Positions 4,275 through 28,300 are shown, numbered from the stretch's first letter. The stretch: DNA of 33,633 bases from Intoshia linei (GCA_001642005.1 LWCA01000287.1:1-33633), one strand, 5' to 3'. Translations and numbers: made by a program. Notes: generated by a model from the sequence alone, not told the origin.

Positions 4275-4975
4275 CACTCTATAACGGTATATACTAGAAG
4301 GCGGTACCAAGAGATCATTAGAAAAAGTAATACAAAGTGATATTGTAGAAGTAGAATATCGTTAGAGTTACCGTTAGAGCTGTTCGTTATCGAAAGTACC
4401 AAACATTTCAATTTAAATAATTAAATAAATAAATTAAATAATTTAAAACTCTATTTTAAAATAATAATTCATATTTTGACAATTTTTCTTATTTTCCTAA
4501 TATAGGCTAGATTTCAGCTCTTAAATCATTCCTATATCTTCATACATTTTCTGTAAAATATATAATTCAAGTTCCTCAGCGTATTATCTGACTTTCATAT
4601 GTGTAATAATATAACTTTTTTCTAATTTAACCTTGATATTATTAACAGTAATATCTTCTATTTCTGTAATATCAGATTTTTGCTCAAGTATAGAATTATT
4701 CAAGAAATCTTCTTCATCATAATCTCGTTCGTAATGAGGTGAAAATTAATTATTATCAATTTCTAAATGAAGTATTAAAAACATTGTCATAATCAATAAG
4801 TGAATTTTTTAACAATTCTTATTTTAAAACAATTCTTAATTGATTTTTTGGATACATTATTCCAGGCTTCTATTGTAAACAGTATTGCATTTAACATTGT
4901 GGTAATATGTTTATTTATTTTTATTATTTTAATTTTTTTTGTTCGTTATTGAAAATTCAACATGTTCGTTAACAT
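4275..4975 (-). mobile_element. Probable decayed pogo/Tigger-like remnant
   Basis: Recurrent GTTCGTTA / CTCTATAACG motifs like those near pogo-type termini, and a stop-interrupted acidic stretch on the minus strand (DYDEEDFLNNSILEQKSDITEIED). No clean TIR pair found. Confidence 0.3.
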
Positions 4976-5037
4976 TTCATATTAATTGCTAAAATTTTTA
5001 AAAAATAAAAAGTAAACGGTTAATAATAAACGGTTAA

Positions 5038-5691
5038 CCGTTTATTTTCTAGCGTTCCATTAATGCAACACTTGTTTTAATTATTCATGGCAGCTCAATT
5101 ATATGATATTTATCAATTAAAAAAATGAATTAGATTTATTAAAATACGTGTTTTCTCGTGAAATTACTATTTTTTATAGTATAATTAGTATAATTGAGTT
5201 TATATATTATATATTGAGAAGAGAATCTAAAGGAAACACACCTTAGATTCCGTTCTGACCTAGCTGCATATCTCGTGAAAAATTCATCAAATTTGAATAA
5301 CAGGAACATATTGTCTGGTCCAAGTTCAAAAATACCTGATGAATTGCGTTATGATGGAATGCAGCATTATTTGGTCCATAATAATAAGCAGACAAGGTGT
5401 ATAGTATGTCATAAAAATACCTTCAAAATATGCGAAAAGTGTTGTAAAAAGATGCACATCAATTGTTTTAAACAATATCATAATAAATAATGAAATTTAT
5501 TTATTTTACAAAAAATATTTATTTTATACCTCAATGTTACCAATGTTCCATTAATGGAACACCTATAATTAGCGTTTATTAATTGACTTCAAAAAAATTA
5601 TGATTCTAAATGACACTACATTTCAACTTATAATGTAAGTATTCGGATATAATATGGTCTACTCATTTAAAAATATTAGTGATGAGAAGGC
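5038..5691 (+). mobile_element. piggyBac-derived remnant retaining the C-terminal Cys-rich domain
   Basis: ORF 5275-5490 reads DELRYDGMQHY...RCIVC...KICEKC...HINCFKQYH, matching the piggyBac/PGBD C-terminal zinc-binding motif. TTAA at 5034-5037 and 5692-5695. Repeated near-palindrome GTTCCATTAATG(C/G)AACAC at ~5054 and ~5545. TIRs are degenerate. Confidence 0.7.
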
Positions 5692-5700
5692 TTAACAATA

Positions 5701-7111
5701 TCCTAACTTATATAAAATGCTACGCTATTTTTGTTTGTGTGTGTGTTCCACTTTATTGAAATAACTACCACTCTTGCAATTTTTTAAAGACCACATTTCA
5801 ATTACAGTTTTTTCCGGGACGTATATTAAGATATATTTCAATCTCCCAATTTCACATCTTAAGGGTCAAAAACTTTTGTTGTCCCTCTTTTTGAAAATCA
5901 AACGAGTTGGAGAATTTAAAAAAATATATAAGCTGATGCGGATTTTATAATCATCAGCATTATCATAAATTTAAATTAAAAAATTATTTTAAATTAAATC
6001 TTCAAAGTCAAAACCCCAAATTACCCTTCTTTTTTTAATGAAAACAGTCCTAGAATTTAAAAAAATTACAGATGGTACAGTTCTATCCTGTTAACACACA
6101 TAAAAAATTTCAATCCGAATAAGTGACGACTTCACGGTCAAAAAAGCATTTTAGTATTCATATATTTTTTTCCGAAATATTTTATTAAAACAAAAAATGT
6201 GAAATAATTAACTGTCCGAAAATTAAAAAAAAGGATTATTCTGATAGAGCTTATTCCAGTTGATATAAGTAGAATAATATAAATATAAAAGTTTAACCCG
6301 AGAAATTTTCGCATTCCCGATGAAAAATAATTTTTAATATATTATTAACCAATATTTTTTAAATATTTCGATTAAAATAAAAATTGAAAATGTAAATATT
6401 GATCCTACAATTTCAAAACAAATATGCATTGAATGTCTACACATTTCCAATAAAGTAATATGGGTATAAATCTATATAATTCATTCCTTCGCAATTTTTA
6501 AATTTCAAATTCTTATTTTCAAAATATTTTGAATACAAATTTAAGTAGAAACAACAAAACTAAAACTAAACTAAAATTTGATAAAATTCGACTAAAATAT
6601 GTTTATAAAGTGAAGATTCGGTTAATTATTGATACAAATTGGTATTTGTAAGTATTTATTAAATTGGTACTGAATATATGTTATCACATTGAAAATGACA
6701 AAATAGTTTTTATTAAGGTTTAAGTTTTTATAATTTTATTTTTTCTGGAATTTTAGGCTATTTATGACAATTTTTAAAATTGGACTGTTTTTACTTTATT
6801 TTTATTATTATACACAAATTTAGACTAATAAATTAAAAAAATGGGATAACAATTGTTTTTAAAATTCTTTACGCAAATATTAAAACACAAAAAATTAAGA
6901 TATAATAATTCACTTTAAAGTAAAAAGTAATGTAATATGATGGTTCCACCTGAAACAAATTTGGGAACCACTCCTTTAAAGGATTGATAATAGTGAATAA
7001 TAGATTTTTTAAATTAGATTTTCAACGTGAATTTATGTGCTAAGTATAATAAAAATGTGCCCTCGGCAGAATTAGGTCCTGTTTGTACGTAGTACATAAC
7101 AGTCAATCTAG
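5701..7111 (+). mobile_element. Non-autonomous Helitron-like element
   Basis: 5' A|TC start followed by a TATATAAAAT and GTTT/GT microsatellite. 3' hairpin CTGTTTGTAC-GTA-GTACATAACAG (7079-7102) then CTAG|T (7108-7112). Body shared with other copies in the window. The 6430-7050 portion may contain nested material. Confidence 0.7.
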
Positions 7112-8200: not shown

Positions 8201-11200
8201 TTAGGCTAATAATAAGTATAAAAATAACAATAAACTGGAAATTTTAAGATAATAAGCACTGGCAATAACATATTCATCAGATATTTTGTTGCATAAATGG
8301 GATAGACAACATTGTTGACAAGTTTCAAGTGTGTCTGAAATTGAAGTACAATTTAAATTATCAACATTTGAACAAGTTTGATTTTTGCAAGATTGATGAA
8401 AAGATTTAATAACATTGCTAGATTTTTCTTTAATAAAAGTTAACCAACAAGAATGGGCACTGAAACAACCATAATCGGATATTGTATTTTTTAAACATCC
8501 ATTAATTGAATTGCATTCATAACACTTGAAAGAAGAACAATGATCATTATCTGTTAGATAAAAATTTGTCTTACATTTCTGACAATATTCGGGAGGATCA
8601 ATGCAGTTATTGCAATTTTGACATAAAATACATCTCTTGTCTTCTGTTATCGCAGCACCATGTTGACATGCATCGCATACCAAAGAATTGTTAAATTTGA
8701 CTTCAACATGACATTTATCACAAAATGGTATAACCCCACTACATTGATTGCAAATTGTACTATTGTTAACCACTAGTGAATAAGAATCAAATTTACAATC
8801 CAAACAATCCGAACTAGTCTTGCAGGAAATGCAATTGTCAGTGCAATATGTGCATGCATTTAGCAAATTGTCCCAAATGAACCCGTCTAGACACCTATCA
8901 CATGAATTGGAATCTAAACAAGTTTTACAATTTTGAGGACAATTTAAACAATTCGTGTCTATCGGATAAAAATTAGGTAAACATTTTAAACAATTGGTAG
9001 AGCTACAGGACACACAATTTGGTCTACAATTTTCACAAACAAATGATGTTGAATTAAAGTATTGGCTCAAATATCTACATTTTTGACAAGTATTTGGAGA
9101 AGTACACGTGATGCAATTCATTCCGCAGTTACTACATGTCTTTAACAGTGAATCATAAAAATAACCAGTTTTGCAAGTCAAGCATTCAGTTGAATTTACA
9201 CATGTAGCGCAATTTGTCATACATTTTTCGCATTGGTCATTCAAAAGATAGTGTTCTTTTGCGCATACATTGCAAACATTATAATTGTCGCAGAATTCAC
9301 AATTTAACGGGCACTTTTCACAAATTTGTAAATTATAATCAATGTTGCAGCTAATACATGAAGGTTCAGAAATTTCATCAATTTGGAAACACTTTTGACA
9401 GTCTAAATTGGTTGAAATGCAAACGTTGTTCTGGTTTAGACAATAACCATTCTGGCAGGTTGTACAAATTCCGCTTTTACATGAATTGCAGTTAATTGAA
9501 CATTTTTTACAAATCAAATTTTCATAGGAATGCCCAGTTTTACATGATATACATATATTTTCATTACACTCATTGCAATTTTCGATACACGGAATACACT
9601 GTGTCAATTCAGTGTTCATATAATGGCCTTTCAAACATTTTTGGCATGCTAGATTATCACATACTTGACAAAATTCTGGACATGGTTCACAATTGTTTAA
9701 TAAGCTCATGTAGGTTTGATCTTTACATTGAGTACACGTTACAGCATCAATACATTTTGCACAGTTTAATATGCAATTTTTGCATGTTCTTGTTACACTG
9801 TCCCAATAGGTTGCCATTGAATTATTATTAATTTCAAGTCCACATTTGTTACATTTGTATTCAGAATCTAAAAATTTGAATTTTTTAAAAAATAACAAAT
9901 AAATTATAATTATAATTGATAATTTTACAATACAAATTAGAAGCAAATATATTTTACATCATTACTTGTCAAAAGGTTCACGCTATATTACAGGGTATCC
10001 AATGATAAAGTCATGCATTATTTCAGAAATTAATTTAATATTATTAAAGAGAAAACACCACTAAATCCAACTCCAAAAGAGAAAATCAAAATTTACCAAG
10101 GCTTAAGATAAAAATTTAATTTTACCAACCCTTAAAGAAAAAATTCTTTTTTTCCAATATTTTTTTAAAAAACCCAAGTTTACAAACCCTTAGGGAAGAA
10201 ATTTATTTTTTTTAACTTTTTTTAAAAATTGAAATTTGATTTTATCCTTAGAGTTAAGCTGAGTGCATCCGTTAAATCTTAACGAGACTGCCGTTTTCAG
10301 TGTTAATTTTAAATATAAAAGTAAAAAGTAAACCACAAATTATTTTTAGCTTTTTCTACATTTTATATACGGTATTATAAAATGTAAAATATAAAACAGT
10401 ATAAAAAAGATAAAACATAACGTTAATGTAAAATTTCAAAACAATTAAATACAGAAAAATAATTAATAATGGTGGAATAATAAAACAAAACACATCAGTT
10501 ATGGATCCTATATTCTGACCTTTATTTAATCCTAAAATAAACGTACGTTAAAGTGTAATTTAGATAAGTCCATCATATTTGTGAATTTTGGAATGAATTG
10601 ATGACATGGAGTCAAAGCCGAAATAGCAGTCTCAATACGAAATCCTAAATGAAAAATAGGACCCTAAGAAATTTTTCAAAAATTTCTAAAAAAACCACCC
10701 TTAAAGTTCTGTTCAAAAAAAATTCCTAAAAACGCCCCTTCAAAATTTAGTTCAAAAAAATTTTTCAAAAAAACACCCTTAAAGTTTGGTTTAAAAAAAA
10801 CTTAAAAACCTCTTGACAGTTTGTTTAAAAAAAAATCTTAAAACCCCTTTGAAAGTATGGTTCAAAAAAAATATCTTAAAAACCCCCTTGAAAGTTTGGC
10901 GAAAAAAAAAACTTAAAAACCCCATTGAAAGTTTGTTTAAAAAAAATCTTAAAACCTCTTTCAAAGTATGGTTCCAAAAAAATCTTAAAAACCCTATTAA
11001 AAGTTTGGTTCAAATAAATTCTAAGAAACCCTTCTTAAAACTTTGTTAAAAAAAAATATCTTAAAAACCCCCTTGAAAATTTGTTTAAAAAAAATCTTAA
11101 AACCCCTTTGAAAGTATGTTTAAAAATAATTGTAAAACCACTTTTGAAAATATAGTTCAAAAAAAATTTCTAAAATTTCCTAAAATGGAAATATAAATGA

Positions 11201-13748
11201 AAATTTTACATATTCTACGACTTGTCCGTGGAATGTGTATATTTCACAGTTGTACACATTCTATACAACATATAATTTTAAATAAATAACCCAAAATTGT
11301 TCCGATTTGACAAGCAGAGCATTTAGCTTTTAAAAAGTAGTGTGGAGCAACAGTACATTGATTACAACTTTCTATCGTGTCTAGATGACACTTTTCACAT
11401 TGATAAACACTGTTGTCGTTAATAAAACGCTTTTTCAAGACATAATTGAATTCACATTCAATACACTGAGATAAACTGGAACATTTATTACAATTTTTAG
11501 GGCAAAATTCGCAAACTCCGTTACTCCAAATGCGTTTTGAACAAGATTTGCATTGATTTTCTAATGCTATAATGGTATTATCACACAAAGTGCACTCATG
11601 ATTATCGCTACTCAAAAAATAATTGACATCACATCTAATACATTGATCAGAATTACATTCCACGCAATTGAATGGACAGGTATGACAAGAAGGCACACCA
11701 TCTAACCAAATTCGTTCATTATCGGGTACATTACATGCTTCACACCGTTCTGAACTATATAGCGATTGAGTTGGACAATAAATATCTTTACATACAAAAA
11801 TGGAGTCAACATTTACCCATACACCACGACACACATTACATTCAACTTGAGATGTAATTAAATTTTTAGACGTACAATCAATTTTTTGACACGTATAATC
11901 TATGGACAGTCGAATCCACATGCTTCCTTGTTTAGTTTTTTCACATTTTTGACAGGTTGATTCCATTATGCTGCCTTCTTCTAAACTTTGACAATTCAAA
12001 GAGATGCACTTTCCGCCTTCAACGGGTAACCATTTACTATTTCGACACGCTCCACATTTTTCTTCCGTATACGCTTCATAAACTCGGTTTGTCGAACAAT
12101 TTTTTCCATATTTAACGCATTTCAAACCGGTCCAATAGTAATCTAGAGCTTGGTTGCAAATGTGTTCAGTTAATGGTACAGATTGAGTAAACAATTTGCA
12201 TTTTAATTCTGTTGCAGACCAATACATGAATGGAAAACAATAATTACATGAGGTAGGTGTGATAGGATTGTTACATAGCTGAGATACAAGTTTGGTACCT
12301 GAAACAGACCTTCCAAAACAGTGCAAACATTTATGTTCGGTTGACATGATTCCCCCGTCACATCCATATTCAATCGTTTGACATGCATTATTTAGCCAAA
12401 TTCTTCCTTCACATGCATTACATTCATTTTCTGATGTGGGGCTCATACATGTAGTGAAAATGCAACTTGTAGAATTCCAGTATAATTTCATTCTTTTACA
12501 ACCAGTACACTTTTCAGGAGTATCGAGAGAATCTGACAAGCAATTTATTACTTTGCAACCATTTCCATTCCAGTATCTGTTATGGCACTGACCACAATGG
12601 TTTTGAGATATTATCAGCTCGACATTATCACAATCAAAAGGTATACATTTATCTACTAAAGAATTCCAAATAAATCCACATTTGTCAAAAGAATCTTGTT
12701 CCCAATAATCAAAATTGTTGCATTTGTATCCAATATCGCATTTACCCATTACCCATATTCTGTTATCGCACGCATTGCATTCGCCTTGGGTTTGTACGAT
12801 TCGTAAATTTGTTTCACACACAGCTTGAACACATATATTGTTTAAAAAATAATATGAATTGCATTTTTCACATAATAATTGAGTACTGGCGTTACTACAT
12901 TCAATTCGAGCGCAATTTCCATTAGGTATGTATAAACCTGGCCGTGTGTTACATATTTCACAGCTTAATTGAGTTATTAATGTTTCATCACCACATTTGT
13001 TACATTTATCTGTAAAATACAAATTTTTGCACTTGTGACAACTTTCCTTTATACTAATTAAAACTGGATCAACCGAGGTACAGCTCATACATCTACTGAT
13101 TGTTCCTGTTACAACCCACACGTAACCTTCCATGCAACCATCAACCAATAAACCATTCACTGTACTGATACAATCACCATCACCTTCGCAATTCCTACAA
13201 TTAAGGGGACACGGAATACACTGGTTTGTGGTTTCATTGGACCAATAATTTCCATAAAAATGCAATTTACAATCTTGACAAGTATTTTGATCAAATTGTA
13301 AACATTTACGACATTTTTGGTTTTTATCCAAAAAATAACCATCAATACATAACTTACACATTCCATTCTCGCATAATTGACAAAACGAACAATTTTTTTC
13401 AATAGACACACACTTTGCCATTTTTGAAACATAATGATCCTTTTTACATATATCACAAGTTAAATACGATTTACACAAGTTACAGTTTTTTGAACATTCT
13501 ATACAAGTCCCATTGTAAACAAAATGAGATTTTTTACACAAATTACAACCATTTTTATCACAATTGATACAATTTAAACTGCATTTACTACAAACATGTC
13601 CATTTCGATAAAACCCTGAATTGCATTCTAGACATGACATGCTATTGTTTTCACATGATTCACAATTGTAAATGCTACATTCATTTAATGTTTCAATTGA
13701 ATTAAATCTAATTGTGAATATAAAAATCCAGAAAAAATTCATCAACAT
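8201..13748 (-). CDS. Giant Cys-rich (furin-like/CxxC repeat) cell-surface protein with C-terminal Ly6/uPAR domain and GPI-anchor-type tail, ~1374 aa, two exons
   Basis: Exon 1 13748-11291 and exon 2 9867-8201 join through a phase-1 GT..AG intron (11290-9868), reading ...CQIGTIL|DSEYKCNKC.... Total 4125 nt. Hydrophobic N-terminus MLMNFFWIFIFTIRFNS; dozens of CxxC modules; FKCYEC...CCLSHLCN at 8530-8288; terminal hydrophobic ISSLLLFLYLLLA* with no cytosolic tail. Confidence 0.85.
10670..11275. repeat. ~35-bp tandem minisatellite array (about a dozen units) plus conserved tail, inside the intron of the Cys-rich gene
   Basis: Units approximately AAAAAAATCTTAAAAACCCCTTTGAAAGTTTGGTT. The tail at 11188-11275 is homologous to 272-355. 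Confidence 0.9.
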
Positions 13749-22708: not shown

Positions 22709-23571
22709 TTATGTGAATGTGTCAAAATTTGAAACTTCTGGAAAATGATTTACAGCATTGACTGAACCCATATCCTCTAATGTTATATATCCGTTTTTAG
22801 CAAGGTTTCTTCTAAATGGAAGTAAATAAAATAAAATATACAATATTACTTCTTATTGAGATAGCGATACATGATAAATGCAATCACGGGAACAGAAGAA
22901 ATGACGATGCACATGATCACAATCAAAACAGCAGGATTAGATGCATCAGATACATGTTTTCCTTGATTACGTTCTGTAAGCGGTGTGAGAGGTTTATACG
23001 GTGTTGATTCATTACGAAAACGATCAGTTTCATTGATATGATAAAGTGGAAAGTCTTGAATTTTTTGTTTAACCGTTGTGGATAGATTGTTCAAAGAATT
23101 TGATTCATGTAAATTTGAATCTGGCGTACTGATTGGTTTAATTGTACTGGATGTAATATTAGATAAAGTTAGATTTTCCACAGTTGTAGTTTCAGTTTCA
23201 TTTTTATTTACAGGATTTATAATCTTTGTGTCATTTAAATTTAAACTTTTTCCACCAAAATCAGTACTATTTGTTGAAGTTGCATTAGATAATGGAATTG
23301 GCTCAATTTTTGAATCTGTAATATTGCCATTTACTAAACTGTTGACCGTGTCAATGCTACTGTGTGTCTCATTTAATTTTACGGTGGAATTGTCGACTTT
23401 TATTGTCATATTTTTTGGAGAATCAGTTTGGTTAGTTTTTTTTACATTGTCATAGTTGTAATCTGTCGTATTGTCCAGGCTAAATACAATGAACGATACT
23501 AAATTCAATTAAAATACAAATTTTATTCATTTCTTACGTAATACAACTATCGTTGAAATTATAATTTTCAT
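22709..23571 (-). CDS. Mucin-like, highly N-glycosylated type I membrane protein, ~261 aa, 3 exons
   Basis: Exons 23571-23538, 23498-22850 and 22811-22709 splice in frame. Signal peptide MKIIISTIVVLLSFIVFS; S/T/N-rich ectodomain with 15 NxS/T sequons; TM AVLIVIMCIVISSVPVIAFIM; basic stop-transfer YRYLNKKR; cytosolic GYITL. Confidence 0.85.
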
Positions 23572-25352: not shown

Positions 25353-28300
25353 TTATTGACCAATATTGGATGAATCAGTCTACAGAAAAAATGGAATGCA
25401 TTCCATCATATAAAAAATATAAAATTTACAACTACAATTATACTGTAGTTCAAAACTTACTTTACTTGAAGCTTGAAATTTAATTGATTCTTTCTTAGCT
25501 TCAATCCCAACTTCTCCAGTGCAATACGAATCATAAATTGTAGACATACAACACTTATATCCCCATTCGCCATTTAGATAATGAGAACCCCATATAGTCT
25601 AAAAAATATAATATTTAAAAAAATGAGATAATATAATATATTAGAGCAGTGAATGAATTTTACTGTTTTAATGGTCAATAAAAATTTTTTTTAATATTTA
25701 TTTATTATACATATGTATAAATAAATTGTCCCTTCGATCCCATTTTCTATTGATTGTATTAGATCTAGCAAATAGTGCAACTAATCCACTAATGGGGTAT
25801 GAAATGGGACACAAAGGGGGGGGGGGTTGTGTAACACTAAATTATAAAATCTAAAAATAAAAAAATTACAACGTGATTTCCATGATAATCGTCTTCAGGG
25901 TAAATAGAAAGAATCTTGGTAACATTGGAACTCTTAATTAATTTACCCGTATTGTCATATTCCTCATATGCATCAGTTTGAGAAATATCCAATATTTTGT
26001 CATGATCTTTCATATACTGTTCACCCCCATATTTGTTAATAATATCTTTGGATAACGAAATTTTGTGATGTTTAACCCTCTGTTTATATGCTTTATTTAA
26101 TAAAGCTAATTTGGTAGGATCAGCTGACAACTGAACTTCAGTCCCTCGCTCATAAGCTTCCCAGGCAAAGAGCTGCTGTTGAGTCATATTTTGAACATCA
26201 CCAGACGCTAATTCAAAATTGTCACCAAAATAGTTCTTATTGACGTCGCTTTTATTGGTACCGACAAAAGGATTATCACGCATTGAACGACTTTTAGGGT
26301 CATAAAACGCTGAACTCAAATCCAAATTGTACAAATATTTAGCCGTATCCTCTCTAATCCTCAAATTTCTAACAGTAATACGTTCTTTAGACTCAAATTT
26401 TTGTCCTGGTACATCACCAGTTTCTTCGACTTCTTCGTCAGATTTTTTGTCATTAAATTCATTTTCTTCGTCTGCTTTTAAAACAGACTCATTTAATTTA
26501 TCTTCTTTTAATTTTTTACGAGTTTCTTCAATGCTTTCAAACTCTTCTACAACTTCATTATACATTCTAGGATCATACCCCTTCCATCTGTCTCTCTTTG
26601 CAGAAAAATTTAAATTATCGTAAATTTTTTTCTCGACTTCCGTAGGAATGTATCCATCGTCAGAGCATAAATTTTTATTGGAAAATTTTGCAGATATTTT
26701 TCGAGGTTTTTCCATGCATTCCTTTTTTGTGTGCCCCATTGCTCCACAGTTTTCACAGGCCCCAGGTCGATAATGTGTTGAAGGTGGTCGTTTCAATCTG
26801 CTACGTTTTTTCATGATTTCATCAGTTTCGTCGATTGTCACCACATGTTCATAGTGTCTTTGGTGCGATAATGTTGGTGCTCCAGTAGTAATATACCACG
26901 GTGCATCCATCATGTATCTTGGAATGTGTGGATTTATGTCGCTAAATATTGAATTAGTGATATCAAGTACATTTTATTTTTGGTTTAATAAATATAATCA
27001 GAATATACGACAGTCAGTCATTTTGGGTTGGTCCCAAATACAATAGACCTAACTTCCCAGTACTTTAAATTAATTAAAAATAATCTTTTTAAAATGTCTT
27101 TCTAATTATTATGTATCATTGTCGACCTCCACGTTTTTTTATTTAGATATTATTATTAAATTAATTTTTTGATATTTCATTTTTGAAAATTATAAAAACT
27201 ACATACGCTAATTTGTAAATCATCGCTTTTGTGAAAGATTTTGTTAATACATGTATAATATCTATATTTTTTAACCAAACTTTAAAAGAGTTTCTAAATT
27301 TTTTTTTTGAATAATCAAAGTTAAGATTTTTGATTTGTGCAAATTGTTTTATCACTTCATTTAAAGTGTAAATACATTACAGTTTGGTTAAAAAAAATAT
27401 TAAATACTCCCTGGAAAGTTTGGTTAAAAAATATATATAGTATTCTCCCACTACTCGCCAACTCTATAACTCGCCATTAATTTAAAACCATTATTCAAAA
27501 TAAGTTTACAGTTAACTGTTATTTTGTATTAAATTTTACAATTTGTATTACAATTTACATTTTATTGTAATTTAACCTTTAATTTAAAGGTTTTATCTGC
27601 TGTTTCTATAGTTTTAAATTCTCTATTTCGCTAAATTTTTCTAAATCCCAAGAATGGCGAGTTATAAAGACTCTTTATTACAGAAAATACTGTATATAAA
27701 AAAAATTTTAACAAAATCTTTTACAAAATCGAAATTTACAAATTGACGCACTACGTAACATACATTATGTATTTTAGTTGAGTCATTTTTAAGATTGTAG
27801 ATTTTAAGACCATTGTAACAACGCACAGAAAATAATTTAATTGTAAATAATTAAAAAAAAAAAAAGAATCAAAAAAATGCGCGTAAAATTTAAATTATTA
27901 TTTATAGTGAGTTTTTAATTCAACTTTTCATTTATACACAGACAGTCAAATTTTAACACCGATAAGAACTATCGCGATCATTGAATAACAAAGAAATGGT
28001 TATAGTGCAATCTCAATACAAGAACTGCGACACATTTTTCAAAGCGAGCGACATAACTTTAATAATTAAAAATATCAGCGTGACAATATTCATATCACCA
28101 CAATTTTTCCCAAGCATTCAATGTTCATTTTAAAAAATTGATATATAAAGTAAATAATTCAAAATAAAAGCATACTGTCCTCGTTCATCTTTGAGTGGAG
28201 CCATAGCTCCATCTTTTCTGGCCTCGTCCAATTCCTGATATTTTTTATAATCGGATCGTGATTTCATTCTGGTAACATCGCCATCCTCATCAACATCTTG

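What the first reader, a model, noticed from the sequence alone, without database searches (positions are those of the whole stretch)
8201..13748. Giant VSP/i-antigen-like Cys-rich surface protein capped by a Ly6/uPAR domain and GPI signal in an animal genome
Seen in sequence: the two large ORFs join through one phase-compatible intron into a ~1374-aa protein with a signal peptide, well over 1200 aa of CxxC-type modules (roughly 15-20% Cys by eye), an LU/three-finger domain and a terminal hydrophobic tail with no cytosolic part. No protease or kinase domain is present. Established knowledge: long catalytically inert CxxC rods are typical of protist surface coats (Giardia VSPs, Entamoeba Igl, ciliate immobilisation antigens); in animals, furin-like repeats usually accompany PCSK or receptor-kinase domains, and Ly6 proteins are usually small. 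Inference: this is a lineage-specific chimeric coat protein, possibly one member of a surface-antigen family at a host interface, convergent with protist antigen systems.
Basis: partly seen in the sequence, partly recalled or inferred. Interest (0 to 1): 0.8.

Follow-up and report, generated by a model that had tools for sequence, protein, structure and literature searches.

The report
Giant cysteine-rod protein with Ly6-like cap
This gene of the parasitic worm Intoshia linei encodes a roughly 1,370-residue rod of disulfide-rich repeats that ends in a Ly6/uPAR-like module and a probable lipid (GPI) anchor signal. It is the intron-poor member of a family of at least 12 such genes, a design not reported for animals, and its function is untested.

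Summary
Two minus-strand ORFs (13748-11291 and 9867-8201) join in phase across a GT..AG intron. The product is 1374 aa: a hydrophobic leader, about 1240 aa of cysteine modules (14.8% Cys), a 12-Cys Ly6/uPAR-like module and a short hydrophobic tail.

The window is Intoshia linei (orthonectid). The gene is deposited as hypothetical protein A3Q56_02836. That model starts 36 residues too late and adds a doubtful 102-nt exon.

The gene is not single copy. A profile of the last-repeat-to-Ly6 junction finds 12 loci. Seven other loci show the CxxCCxxxxCN ending plus a hydrophobic tail. The paralogues carry about one module per short exon; this locus has two giant exons. Its 1.4-kb intron is almost entirely dispersed repeats.

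The C-terminal repeats match protist VSP-type proteins (E down to 3e-91). The Ly6-like module has no detectable sequence relative outside the family. One unlabelled ENA protein has the same design.

The three-finger fold could not be confirmed, because AlphaFold2 gave poor models. The closest paralogue pair tested is old and under purifying selection (dS about 0.95, dN/dS 0.17), so a variable-antigen system is unlikely. The surface-coat role is inference.

This scan has already noted the same family on other DNA of this genome.

The parts
11291..13748 (-). Exon 1: ATG at 13748, 819 codons plus 1 base, ends in phase 1
   Evidence: There are 0 stops in frame against 44 and 104 in the other two frames. 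It is identical to residues 1-783 of the deposited protein from Met37 onwards.
13698..13748 (-). Hydrophobic leader (aa 1-17), probable signal peptide
   Evidence: This is the most hydrophobic window of exon 1. It aligns with the first exon of the paralogue on contig C30, leader included, at E 1e-9. No signal-peptide predictor was available.
13134..13679 (-). N-terminal block of furin/VSP-type 6-Cys modules (aa 24-205)
   Evidence: The spacing is C-x2-C-x3-C-x2-C-x4-5-C-x2-C-x10-12. Pfam VSP PF03302 scores 22 bits (E 8.8e-5), below its 31.4-bit cut-off.
11688..13091 (-). Middle block of about 11-13 four-Cys 'W modules' (aa 220-687): C-x9-12-C-x2-C-x4-9-W-x4-8-C
   Evidence: Alignment A1 has four invariant Cys and a nearly invariant Trp. 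The profile finds the same module on at least 8 other contigs. No Pfam or PDB sequence hit.
11292..11687 (-). Start of the C-terminal furin/VSP-type block (aa 688-819)
9868..11290 (-). Intron of 1423 nt, GT..AG, phase 1, built almost wholly of dispersed repeats
   Evidence: One search shows the splice sites. The stretch is 23.5% GC and has stops in all frames. The median I. linei intron is 57 bp (PMC6543705).
10668..11287 (-). Dispersed repeat family 1 with a 36-bp tandem core (10690-11126)
   Evidence: The genome search gave 1096 first-look candidates; the 40 scored gave matches at 69-91% identity, mostly 72-85%. Tandem Repeats Finder result.
10543..10644 (-). 102-nt cassette exon of the deposited model only (35 aa, 1 Cys); doubtful
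   Evidence: Searches show the 35 extra residues. About two thirds of it lies inside a low-copy repeat also found on contigs C2475 and C2133. It breaks the C-x2-C-x11-C-x2-C spacing that the direct join gives.
9892..10240 (-). Dispersed repeat family 2
   Evidence: 816 first-look candidates, 69-90% identity.
8201..9867 (-). Exon 2: 2 bases plus 554 codons plus the stop
8540..9865 (-). C-terminal block of about 13 furin/VSP-type modules, ending in the conserved C-I-D-P junction
   Evidence: Ten perfect C-x2-C-x3-C-x2-C-x4-6-C-x2-C units. Relatives carry PF03302, best E 3e-91. The junction is conserved in 12 loci.
8288..8530 (-). 12-Cys Ly6/uPAR-like module (F-K-C-Y-E-C ... C-C-L-S-H-L-C-N)
   Evidence: The Cys spacing is 2,5,9,5,19,4,7,9,2,0,4. 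It carries the xCxxC and CCxxxxCN motifs that define the family (PMC6893729). The Atlas feature search returns only three-finger-clan clusters, at scores of 0.76-0.82. Exon-level HMMs are specific for this module. There is no Pfam hit and the fold is unconfirmed.
8204..8287 (-). GPI-attachment-type signal: small residues (A-S-A), a short spacer, then a 10-13-residue hydrophobic end with no cytosolic residues
   Evidence: The same layout occurs in 7 paralogues. No GPI predictor was available.

Best explanation
This is a real, selectively maintained Intoshia linei gene. Its product enters the secretory pathway through an N-terminal leader. The product is an extended, heavily disulfide-bonded rod of about 35 small cysteine modules: a furin/VSP-type block, a block of Trp-containing 4-Cys modules, then a second furin/VSP-type block. 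It ends next to the membrane in a 12-Cys Ly6/uPAR-like module. It is most likely held on the outer face of the cell by a GPI anchor that replaces the short hydrophobic C-terminal tail.

The gene is one of at least 12 paralogues with the same block order. It is the only one seen here whose modules are not split by short introns. It has two giant exons and a single intron swollen by repeat insertions, which points to intron loss or a retro-copied origin.

Shown: gene structure, module anatomy, family membership, sequence constraint.

Inferred: the signal peptide, the GPI anchor, the three-finger fold, and the role (a passive coat or an adhesion/recognition rod on the parasite's cell surface).
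For: - Gene structure: ORFs, splice sites and phase. A deposited protein uses the same outer splice sites.
- Constraint: 0 stops in 1373 codons. 6.5% of all single-base changes would be nonsense, so 13-40 stops would be expected at 5-15% neutral divergence. The repeats in the intron are 15-28% diverged from their other copies.
- Start codon: the leader and first module align with the first exon of paralogue C30.
- Family: the junction profile finds 12 loci at E <= 5e-5 over the full profile. Seven other loci show CxxCCxxxxCN plus a hydrophobic tail and a stop. The 5 Cys of the N-terminal half of the Ly6-like module are invariant in 11 paralogues. Block order is collinear with C30 and C1359.
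- The Ly6-like module is distinct from the rod modules. Exon-level HMMs hit only that module among 6770 open segments. The next-best hits of the C-terminal HMM are the small canonical Ly6-like genes of the same genome, which Pfam UPAR_LY6 picks up exon by exon.
- Atlas features point only to three-finger-clan clusters.
- Rod: VSP-type relatives.
Against: - No Pfam three-finger model matches the module. The best result is one family member at E 0.074 to UPAR_LY6_2.
- phmmer against 1.84 billion representatives and a PDB profile search found nothing.
- AlphaFold2 gave pLDDT 55 (single sequence) and 52 (half-covered alignment). Only a beta-hairpin at residues 4-14 was modelled.
- No expression data, signal-peptide predictor or GPI predictor was available.
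- A 1.4-kb repeat-filled intron is atypical for a genome with 57-bp median introns and might splice poorly.
- This copy scores lowest of the family against the family HMMs.
Confidence: 0.75

Rival explanations
1. The family is a variable surface-antigen system like Giardia VSPs or ciliate immobilisation antigens. One member at a time would coat the parasite, and switching would evade the host.
For: - A multigene family of at least 12 loci in a parasite with under 9,000 genes.
- The rod is VSP-like in sequence.
- A GPI-type end, as in ciliate i-antigens.
Against: - Members are old and diverged: about 20-45% identical to this gene in the Ly6-like region.
- The closest pair tested has dS about 0.95 and dN/dS 0.17.
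- Block order is fixed.
- The members lie on 12 different contigs, with no second copy in this 33.6-kb window.
- Twelve genes is small for an antigen repertoire.
- Nothing is known about expression.
Confidence: 0.08
2. This particular locus is a dying or dead copy: a retro-copy interrupted by transposon insertions that is no longer spliced or expressed.
For: - It is the only intron-poor member; its open frame at the junction exon is 585 aa against 71-186 aa elsewhere.
- The intron is built of dispersed repeats.
- It is the most divergent Ly6-like module of the family.
- Earlier notes of this scan mention relic members elsewhere.
Against: - Both exons are fully open over 4.1 kb, where 13-40 stops would be expected at the divergence level of the inserted repeats.
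- All cysteines of the module pattern are kept.
- The splice sites and phase are intact.
Confidence: 0.1
3. The C-terminal module is not a three-finger domain but one more divergent cysteine module, and the tail is a membrane-spanning anchor rather than a GPI signal.
For: - No family-model or structural support.
- Cys-rich sequences easily mimic short motifs.
Against: - The module has its own conserved 3-exon structure and 12-Cys pattern in the paralogues.
- Its HMMs match none of the many rod modules but do rank the canonical small Ly6-like genes next.
- It carries both the xCxxC and the CCxxxxCN motifs, and the Asn.
- The tail is 10-20 residues with 0-3 residues after it in every member.
- Atlas neighbours all belong to the three-finger clan.
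Confidence: 0.1
4. The contig is protist contamination in the assembly, because its best sequence relatives are ciliate and amoebozoan proteins.
For: The named hits of exon 2 are Tetrahymena and Entamoeba proteins.
Against: - The family sits on 12 contigs.
- The same contig carries an ordinary Slu7 splicing-factor gene.
- There are no in-frame TAA/TAG codons, as a ciliate genetic code would require.
- The paralogues carry short introns between modules; the median I. linei intron is 57 bp.
- A published survey found LU domains in animals only (PMC13719153).
Confidence: 0.02

Closest known systems
Ly6/uPAR (three-finger, LU) GPI-anchored proteins, such as CD59, Drosophila Boudin/Coiled/Quiver and schistosome Ly6 proteins
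   Same: An xCxxC start, a GC before the fourth Cys, a CCxxxxCN end followed directly by a GPI-type signal, and a membrane-proximal position. The 12-Cys spacing matches the small Ly6-like genes of the same genome.
   Different: Known members are small (one to four LU domains) or carry kinase, 7TM or a few other partners. A 2026 survey lists only 5 LU genes of standard design in orthonectids and no furin/VSP-repeat partner in any phylum. Here about 1240 aa of cysteine modules precede the LU-like module. Pfam models do not detect it.
Giardia VSP-type CxxC repeat proteins (Pfam PF03302), including ciliate and Entamoeba relatives
   Same: Long arrays of CxxC modules. Exon 2 matches such proteins at E 3e-91 to 1e-3 with 25-32% identity.
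   Different: This protein scores below the Pfam cut-off (22 against 31.4 bits). Giardia VSPs end in a transmembrane helix and a short cytoplasmic tail, and the Entamoeba hits carry kinases. This protein ends in an LU-like module and a GPI-type tail. The middle W modules have no VSP counterpart.
Ciliate immobilisation antigens (from my own knowledge; not tested here)
   Same: GPI-anchored, periodic-cysteine, catalytically inert surface proteins encoded by a multigene family.
   Different: They have no LU module and show mutually exclusive expression. No sequence test was made here.
Animal furin-like (FU) repeat arrays, such as the PCSK5 Cys-rich domain and FRAS1 (from my own knowledge)
   Same: C-x2-C-x3-C-x2-C-type modules in tandem.
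   Different: Those arrays accompany protease or other domains. No named animal protein appeared among the relatives.
P0031, an unnamed 915-aa protein from ENA assembly ERZ25070167
   Same: FU-type repeats, an I-D-P-P junction at the same distance before C-Y-x-C, a 10-Cys LU-like module ending CCxxxCN, and a hydrophobic tail.
   Different: 10 Cys rather than 12, a 39% GC contig, an unknown organism, and only weak pairwise similarity in the cap (E 0.049).

Membership tests
Ly6/uPAR (LU, three-finger) domain | N-terminal LxCxxC-type motif and C-terminal CCxxxxCN motif with an invariant Asn (PMC6893729) | tested here: met
   F-K-C-Y-E-C and C-C-L-S-H-L-C-N. Both are conserved across the paralogues.
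Ly6/uPAR (LU, three-finger) domain | 8-10 or more Cys at LU-type spacing within about 60-90 aa | tested here: met
   12 Cys in 81 aa, with spacing 2,5,9,5,19,4,7,9,2,0,4. Small Ly6-like genes on contig C245 have the same topology in their C-terminal half, C-x5-6-C-x10-C-x9-C-x2-CC-x4-CN.
Ly6/uPAR (LU, three-finger) domain | Match to a curated family model (Pfam clan of UPAR_LY6, Toxin_TOLIP, Activin_recp, QVR) | tested here: not met
   No hit at E <= 10 for this protein. One paralogue fragment scores E 0.074 to UPAR_LY6_2. PF00021 in the genome hits only contigs C245 and C2823.
Ly6/uPAR (LU, three-finger) domain | Three-finger beta fold | tested here: inconclusive
   AlphaFold2 gave pLDDT 55 and 52. 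Only a hairpin at residues 4-14 was modelled where the alignment had depth. No fold search was run on such models.
GPI-anchored protein | C-terminal signal: small omega-site residues, a short polar spacer, a hydrophobic end and no cytoplasmic tail | tested here: met
   ...I-A-S-A-Y-Y-L-K-I-S-S plus 10 hydrophobic residues, then the stop. The paralogues show the same layout. This is read from the sequence only.
GPI-anchored protein | Anchor actually attached (PI-PLC release, or a predictor score) | not testable with these tools
   No predictor or experiment was available.
Giardia VSP family (PF03302) | Pfam gathering score | tested here: not met
   The best segment scores 22 bits against a cut-off of 31.4. 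The relatives do carry PF03302.
Giardia VSP family (PF03302) | C-terminal transmembrane helix with a short conserved cytoplasmic tail (from my own knowledge) | tested here: not met
   The protein ends in the hydrophobic stretch itself.
Variable surface-antigen system | A large repertoire of similar genes under diversifying selection or recombination, with exclusive expression | tested here: not met
   12 old, diverged loci. dN/dS is 0.17 for the closest pair tested. Expression is not testable here.

The most novel reading that the evidence does not exclude
Orthonectids, among the most reduced animals, have built a family of giant GPI-anchored 'VSP rod plus Ly6 cap' proteins. In this reading the family forms the host-facing coat of the parasitic plasmodium or of the free-swimming stage, an animal counterpart of protist coat proteins. 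This intron-less copy would be a retro-duplicated member with its own, perhaps stage-specific, expression.
Probability: 0.15. Interest if true: 0.8.

Novelty: new variant of a known kind. Interest (0 to 1): 0.55.

Why it matters
- A published survey found few three-finger (LU) proteins in orthonectids: 5 genes, all of standard design. If the cap is a true LU domain, this family more than triples that count. It also adds a partner domain, a VSP/furin-type rod, that is not on the survey's list of architectures.
- A genome of about 8,700 genes that keeps at least 12 genes with coding sequences on the order of 4 kb of one design is probably using them for something central to its parasitic life. 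That makes them first candidates for the molecular surface of a parasite whose host interface is essentially unknown.
- The locus is a clean example of an intron-poor copy inside an intron-rich family, and of a short intron inflated by repeats.
- It also shows that the public gene model lacks the signal peptide.

Tried and rejected
- Pfam on whole ORFs and on seven segments gave only sub-threshold VSP hits and no LU hit.
- PDB sequence searches with both exons, the cap and a family profile gave nothing meaningful.
- phmmer of the cap against 1.84 billion representatives returned only itself. That search cannot see even the in-genome paralogues, so it says little about absence elsewhere.
- The first own-genome searches with whole exons suggested a single-copy gene. 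This was an artefact of exon-by-exon matching. A 62-position junction profile then found 12 loci.
- AlphaFold2 on the single sequence gave pLDDT 55 with all helices.
- I tried to feed AlphaFold2 an alignment of paralogue exon fragments. MAFFT stacked fragments from different parts of the domain in six attempts, so only the N-terminal-half alignment A6 was usable. The result was pLDDT 52. No fold search was run on these models.
- A word search with the cap of P0031 found no relatives.
- Contamination and pseudogene readings were considered and judged unlikely (see the rival explanations).
- The joined 1374-aa model was never searched or folded. The exons were used separately by reference. The deposited spliced protein P0001 was used only by its id: whole in one ESM Atlas look-up, in pairwise comparisons, and restricted to its exon-2 residues in the homology search.
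Full report
SOURCE AND GENE. The window is 25% GC. It is contig C1055 of a 41.6-Mb, 3520-contig assembly. A word-indexed search with exon 1 returned one protein at 100% identity: 'hypothetical protein A3Q56_02836 [Intoshia linei]', 1372 aa, which UniRef names an EGF-like domain-containing protein. The same contig carries a clear Slu7 splicing-factor ORF (Pfam E 5.5e-81). So this is an orthonectid, a highly reduced parasitic animal.

OBSERVATION.
- The two minus-strand ORFs are real (834 and 581 aa).
The donor GT is at 11290-11289 and the acceptor AG at 9869-9868. Exon 1 ends in phase 1, and the split codon G|AT continues the second ORF's frame. The product is 819+1+554 = 1374 aa.
- Cys content is 14.8% (13.6% in exon 1, 16.8% in exon 2), with 83 CxxC motifs and 15 N-x-S/T sites.
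- The coding frames have no stop. The other frames have 5-13 stops per 100 codons.
- I did not search or fold the joined protein. The exons were used separately by reference. The deposited protein was used only by its id: whole in one Atlas look-up and in pairwise comparisons, and restricted to its exon-2 residues in the homology search.

GENE MODEL AGAINST THE DEPOSITED MODEL.
1. It starts at Met37, so it lacks the hydrophobic leader. The cysteine pattern continues upstream of Met37. Residues 1-49 align with the first exon of the paralogue on contig C30, leader included (E 1e-9). The start at 13748 is therefore the better one.
2. It inserts a 102-nt, frame-neutral exon at 10543-10644 (35 aa, one Cys).
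   - The direct join gives C-x2-C-x11-C-x2-C, which fits the neighbouring spacers. The insert would break that pattern.
   - About two thirds of the insert lies inside a low-copy repeat also present on contigs C2475 and C2133.
   - I regard it as doubtful, but only RNA-seq can decide.

THE INTRON. It is 1423 nt in a genome whose median intron is 57 bp (PMC6543705). Almost all of it is dispersed repeat.
- 11287-10668 is a family with 1096 first-look candidates and a 36-bp tandem core.
- 10610-10341 is a low-copy repeat.
- 10240-9892 is a second abundant family with 816 candidates.
- Only a few bases at each end are unique. The simplest reading is a short intron inflated by insertions.
- The inserted copies are 15-28% diverged from their relatives, yet the flanking 4.1 kb of coding sequence has no stop. 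6.5% of possible substitutions are nonsense, so 13-40 stops would be expected at 5-15% neutral divergence. The gene has therefore stayed under selection since those insertions.

ANATOMY.
- aa 1-17: hydrophobic leader.
- aa 24-205: about five 6-Cys modules of furin/VSP type (C-x2-C-x3-C-x2-C-x4-5-C-x2-C-x10-12).
- aa 220-687: about 11-13 four-Cys modules with a nearly invariant Trp (alignment A1).
- aa 688-1262: about 17 more furin/VSP-type modules, ending in a conserved C-I-D-P junction.
- aa 1266-1346: a 12-Cys module, F-K-C-Y-E-C ... G-C ... C-x2-C-C-x4-C-N.
- After that: I-A-S-A, a short spacer and a 10-13-residue hydrophobic end, followed by the stop.
- Pfam finds no catalytic domain. Its only matches are sub-threshold VSP hits, the best at 22 bits against a cut-off of 31.4.

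IS THE CAP A Ly6/uPAR DOMAIN?
For:
- It has both motifs that the literature uses to define the family (LxCxxC and CCxxxxCN with the invariant Asn; PMC6893729).
- The Cys spacing is LU-like, with one extra pair in the third loop.
- A GPI-type signal follows directly.
- The Atlas feature search returned only three-finger-clan clusters (DUF753, UPAR_LY6, QVR, Toxin_TOLIP, Activin_recp), at lead-level scores of 0.76-0.82.
- In the paralogues the module is a separate three-exon unit.
- HMMs built exon by exon hit only these units among 6770 open segments that include hundreds of rod modules. The next-best hits of the C-terminal HMM are the small canonical Ly6-like genes of the same genome. Pfam UPAR_LY6 picks those up at the exon level, and they share the CxxCCxxxxCN ending.

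Against:
- No Pfam three-finger model matches.
- phmmer against 1.84 billion proteins and PDB searches found nothing.
- AlphaFold2 failed, with pLDDT 55 and 52.

I put the LU reading at about 85%. It is not proven.

FAMILY.
- Whole-exon searches of the genome first suggested a single copy. That was an artefact, because the paralogues are cut into 30-60-aa exons.
- Inspection of weak hits showed two more genes with the same design, on contigs C30 and C1359.
- A 62-position profile of the last-module-to-cap exon (alignment A2) found 12 loci at E <= 5e-5 over its full length: C1359, C1055 (this gene), C30, C2714, C2611, C78, C1651, C2509, C1634, C1281, C2065 and C298.
- Seven of the other loci show CxxCCxxxxCN plus a hydrophobic tail and a stop within the fetched flank.
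- The Trp-module profile hits at least 8 other contigs.
- The block order is shared with C30 and C1359: leader, FU block, W block, FU block, a special module, the C-I-D-P junction, then the cap.
- This gene has a 585-aa open frame at the junction exon; the others have 71-186 aa. It is therefore the intron-poor member. Intron loss or a retro-copied origin is an inference.
- This gene's cap region is about 20-45% identical to those of its paralogues.
- The closest pair tested, C30/C2714, has dS 0.95 and dN/dS 0.17 over 129 cap-region codons. The family is old and under purifying selection.

RELATIVES ELSEWHERE.
- Exon 2 matches 33 proteins at E 3e-91 to 6e-3. Nearly all carry PF03302 (VSP). The named ones are Tetrahymena hypothetical proteins and Entamoeba transmembrane kinases. 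Coverage stops before the cap.
- Exon 1, whose words came from its first 500 residues (the N-terminal FU modules and most of the W block), found only itself.
- One hit, P0031 (915 aa, ENA assembly ERZ25070167), has FU-type repeats, an I-D-P-P junction at the same distance before C-Y-x-C, a 10-Cys LU-like module ending CCxxxCN, and a hydrophobic tail.
  - Its contig is 39% GC and also carries intron-split RCC1-like and kinase-like fragments, so it is eukaryotic.
  - It has no detectable relatives of its own.
- The design therefore exists in at least one other, unidentified organism.
- Because these searches miss even the in-genome paralogues, 'lineage-specific' cannot be claimed firmly.

LITERATURE. 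A 2026 survey of LU proteins in invertebrate genomes reports 5 such genes in the one orthonectid genome, all of standard design (LU only, or receptor kinase). Its list of new architectures (Kunitz, C1q, fibrinogen-like, Ig, IGFBP, LRR, MAM, VWA/VWC and others) has no furin/VSP-repeat partner (PMC13719153). I found no paper linking Intoshia with such proteins.

EARLIER NOTES OF THIS SCAN. After I had reached the above, a look-up showed that other windows of this genome had been flagged for the same kind of gene. Two follow-ups had concluded: a family of at least ten genes with fixed repeat order, the public annotation missing the cap, an unidentified eukaryote with the same design, and no sign of a variable antigen. 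My results agree and were obtained independently. What is particular to this locus is the two-exon structure, the repeat-filled intron and the defects of its deposited model.

MECHANISM AND VERDICT.
- Most likely this is a secreted, GPI-anchored, disulfide-stiffened rod that projects from the cell surface, with a three-finger module at its base.
- The family probably forms part of the parasite's cell-surface layer or mediates adhesion or recognition. This is inferred from the architecture alone.
- The antigen-switching idea is unlikely.
- The finding is real. It is a new variant of known kinds (LU/GPI proteins and VSP-type rods) and is of moderate to good interest.

Noticed in passing
window 25837-26913 (-): A 358-aa ORF encodes a pre-mRNA splicing factor Slu7 with a CCHC zinc knuckle (Pfam Slu7, E 5.5e-81). 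It shows that the contig is ordinary nuclear DNA of the animal.
   Followed up: yes
window 22846-23508 (-): A 220-aa ORF rich in Asn/Ser/Thr, with many N-x-S/T sites, a C-terminal hydrophobic helix and a short basic tail. It looks like a mucin-like type I membrane protein. No Pfam match.
   Followed up: partly
window 10668-11287 and 9892-10240: Two abundant dispersed repeat families of the I. linei genome (about 1100 and about 800 first-look candidates). The first has a 36-bp tandem core and is often found as adjacent inverted copies on other contigs (for example C2278, C2540, C2601), as a foldback or MITE-like element would be. Here they fill an intron.
   Followed up: partly
L013 (contig C245, 6879-9998) and L014 (contig C2823): Small canonical Ly6-like genes: two on opposite strands of C245 and one on C2823. 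They end in CxxCCxxxxCN or CCxxxxCN. The C245 genes share the extra Cys pair seen in the cap of the giant family, which hints that the cap was recruited from such a gene.
   Followed up: partly
L042 (ENA ERZ25070167 contig, gene at 4335-7082): An unlabelled eukaryotic contig (39% GC) carries a large terminal exon encoding FU repeats, an LU-like cap and a hydrophobic tail. The frame stays open upstream of the called start, so the called protein is probably N-terminally incomplete. The neighbours look like an RCC1-repeat gene and a kinase gene.
   Followed up: partly
L022 9302-9424 (contig C1359, 19302-19424): The middle cap exon of paralogue C1359 lies about 1.9 kb downstream of its first cap exon, an unusually long intron for this genome. 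Its last cap exon was not found before the contig end.
   Followed up: no
window 13641-13748: The deposited gene model A3Q56_02836 starts at Met37 and so lacks the signal-peptide-like leader. Proteome-wide secretome predictions for this species may miss this protein, and perhaps its paralogues.
   Followed up: yes
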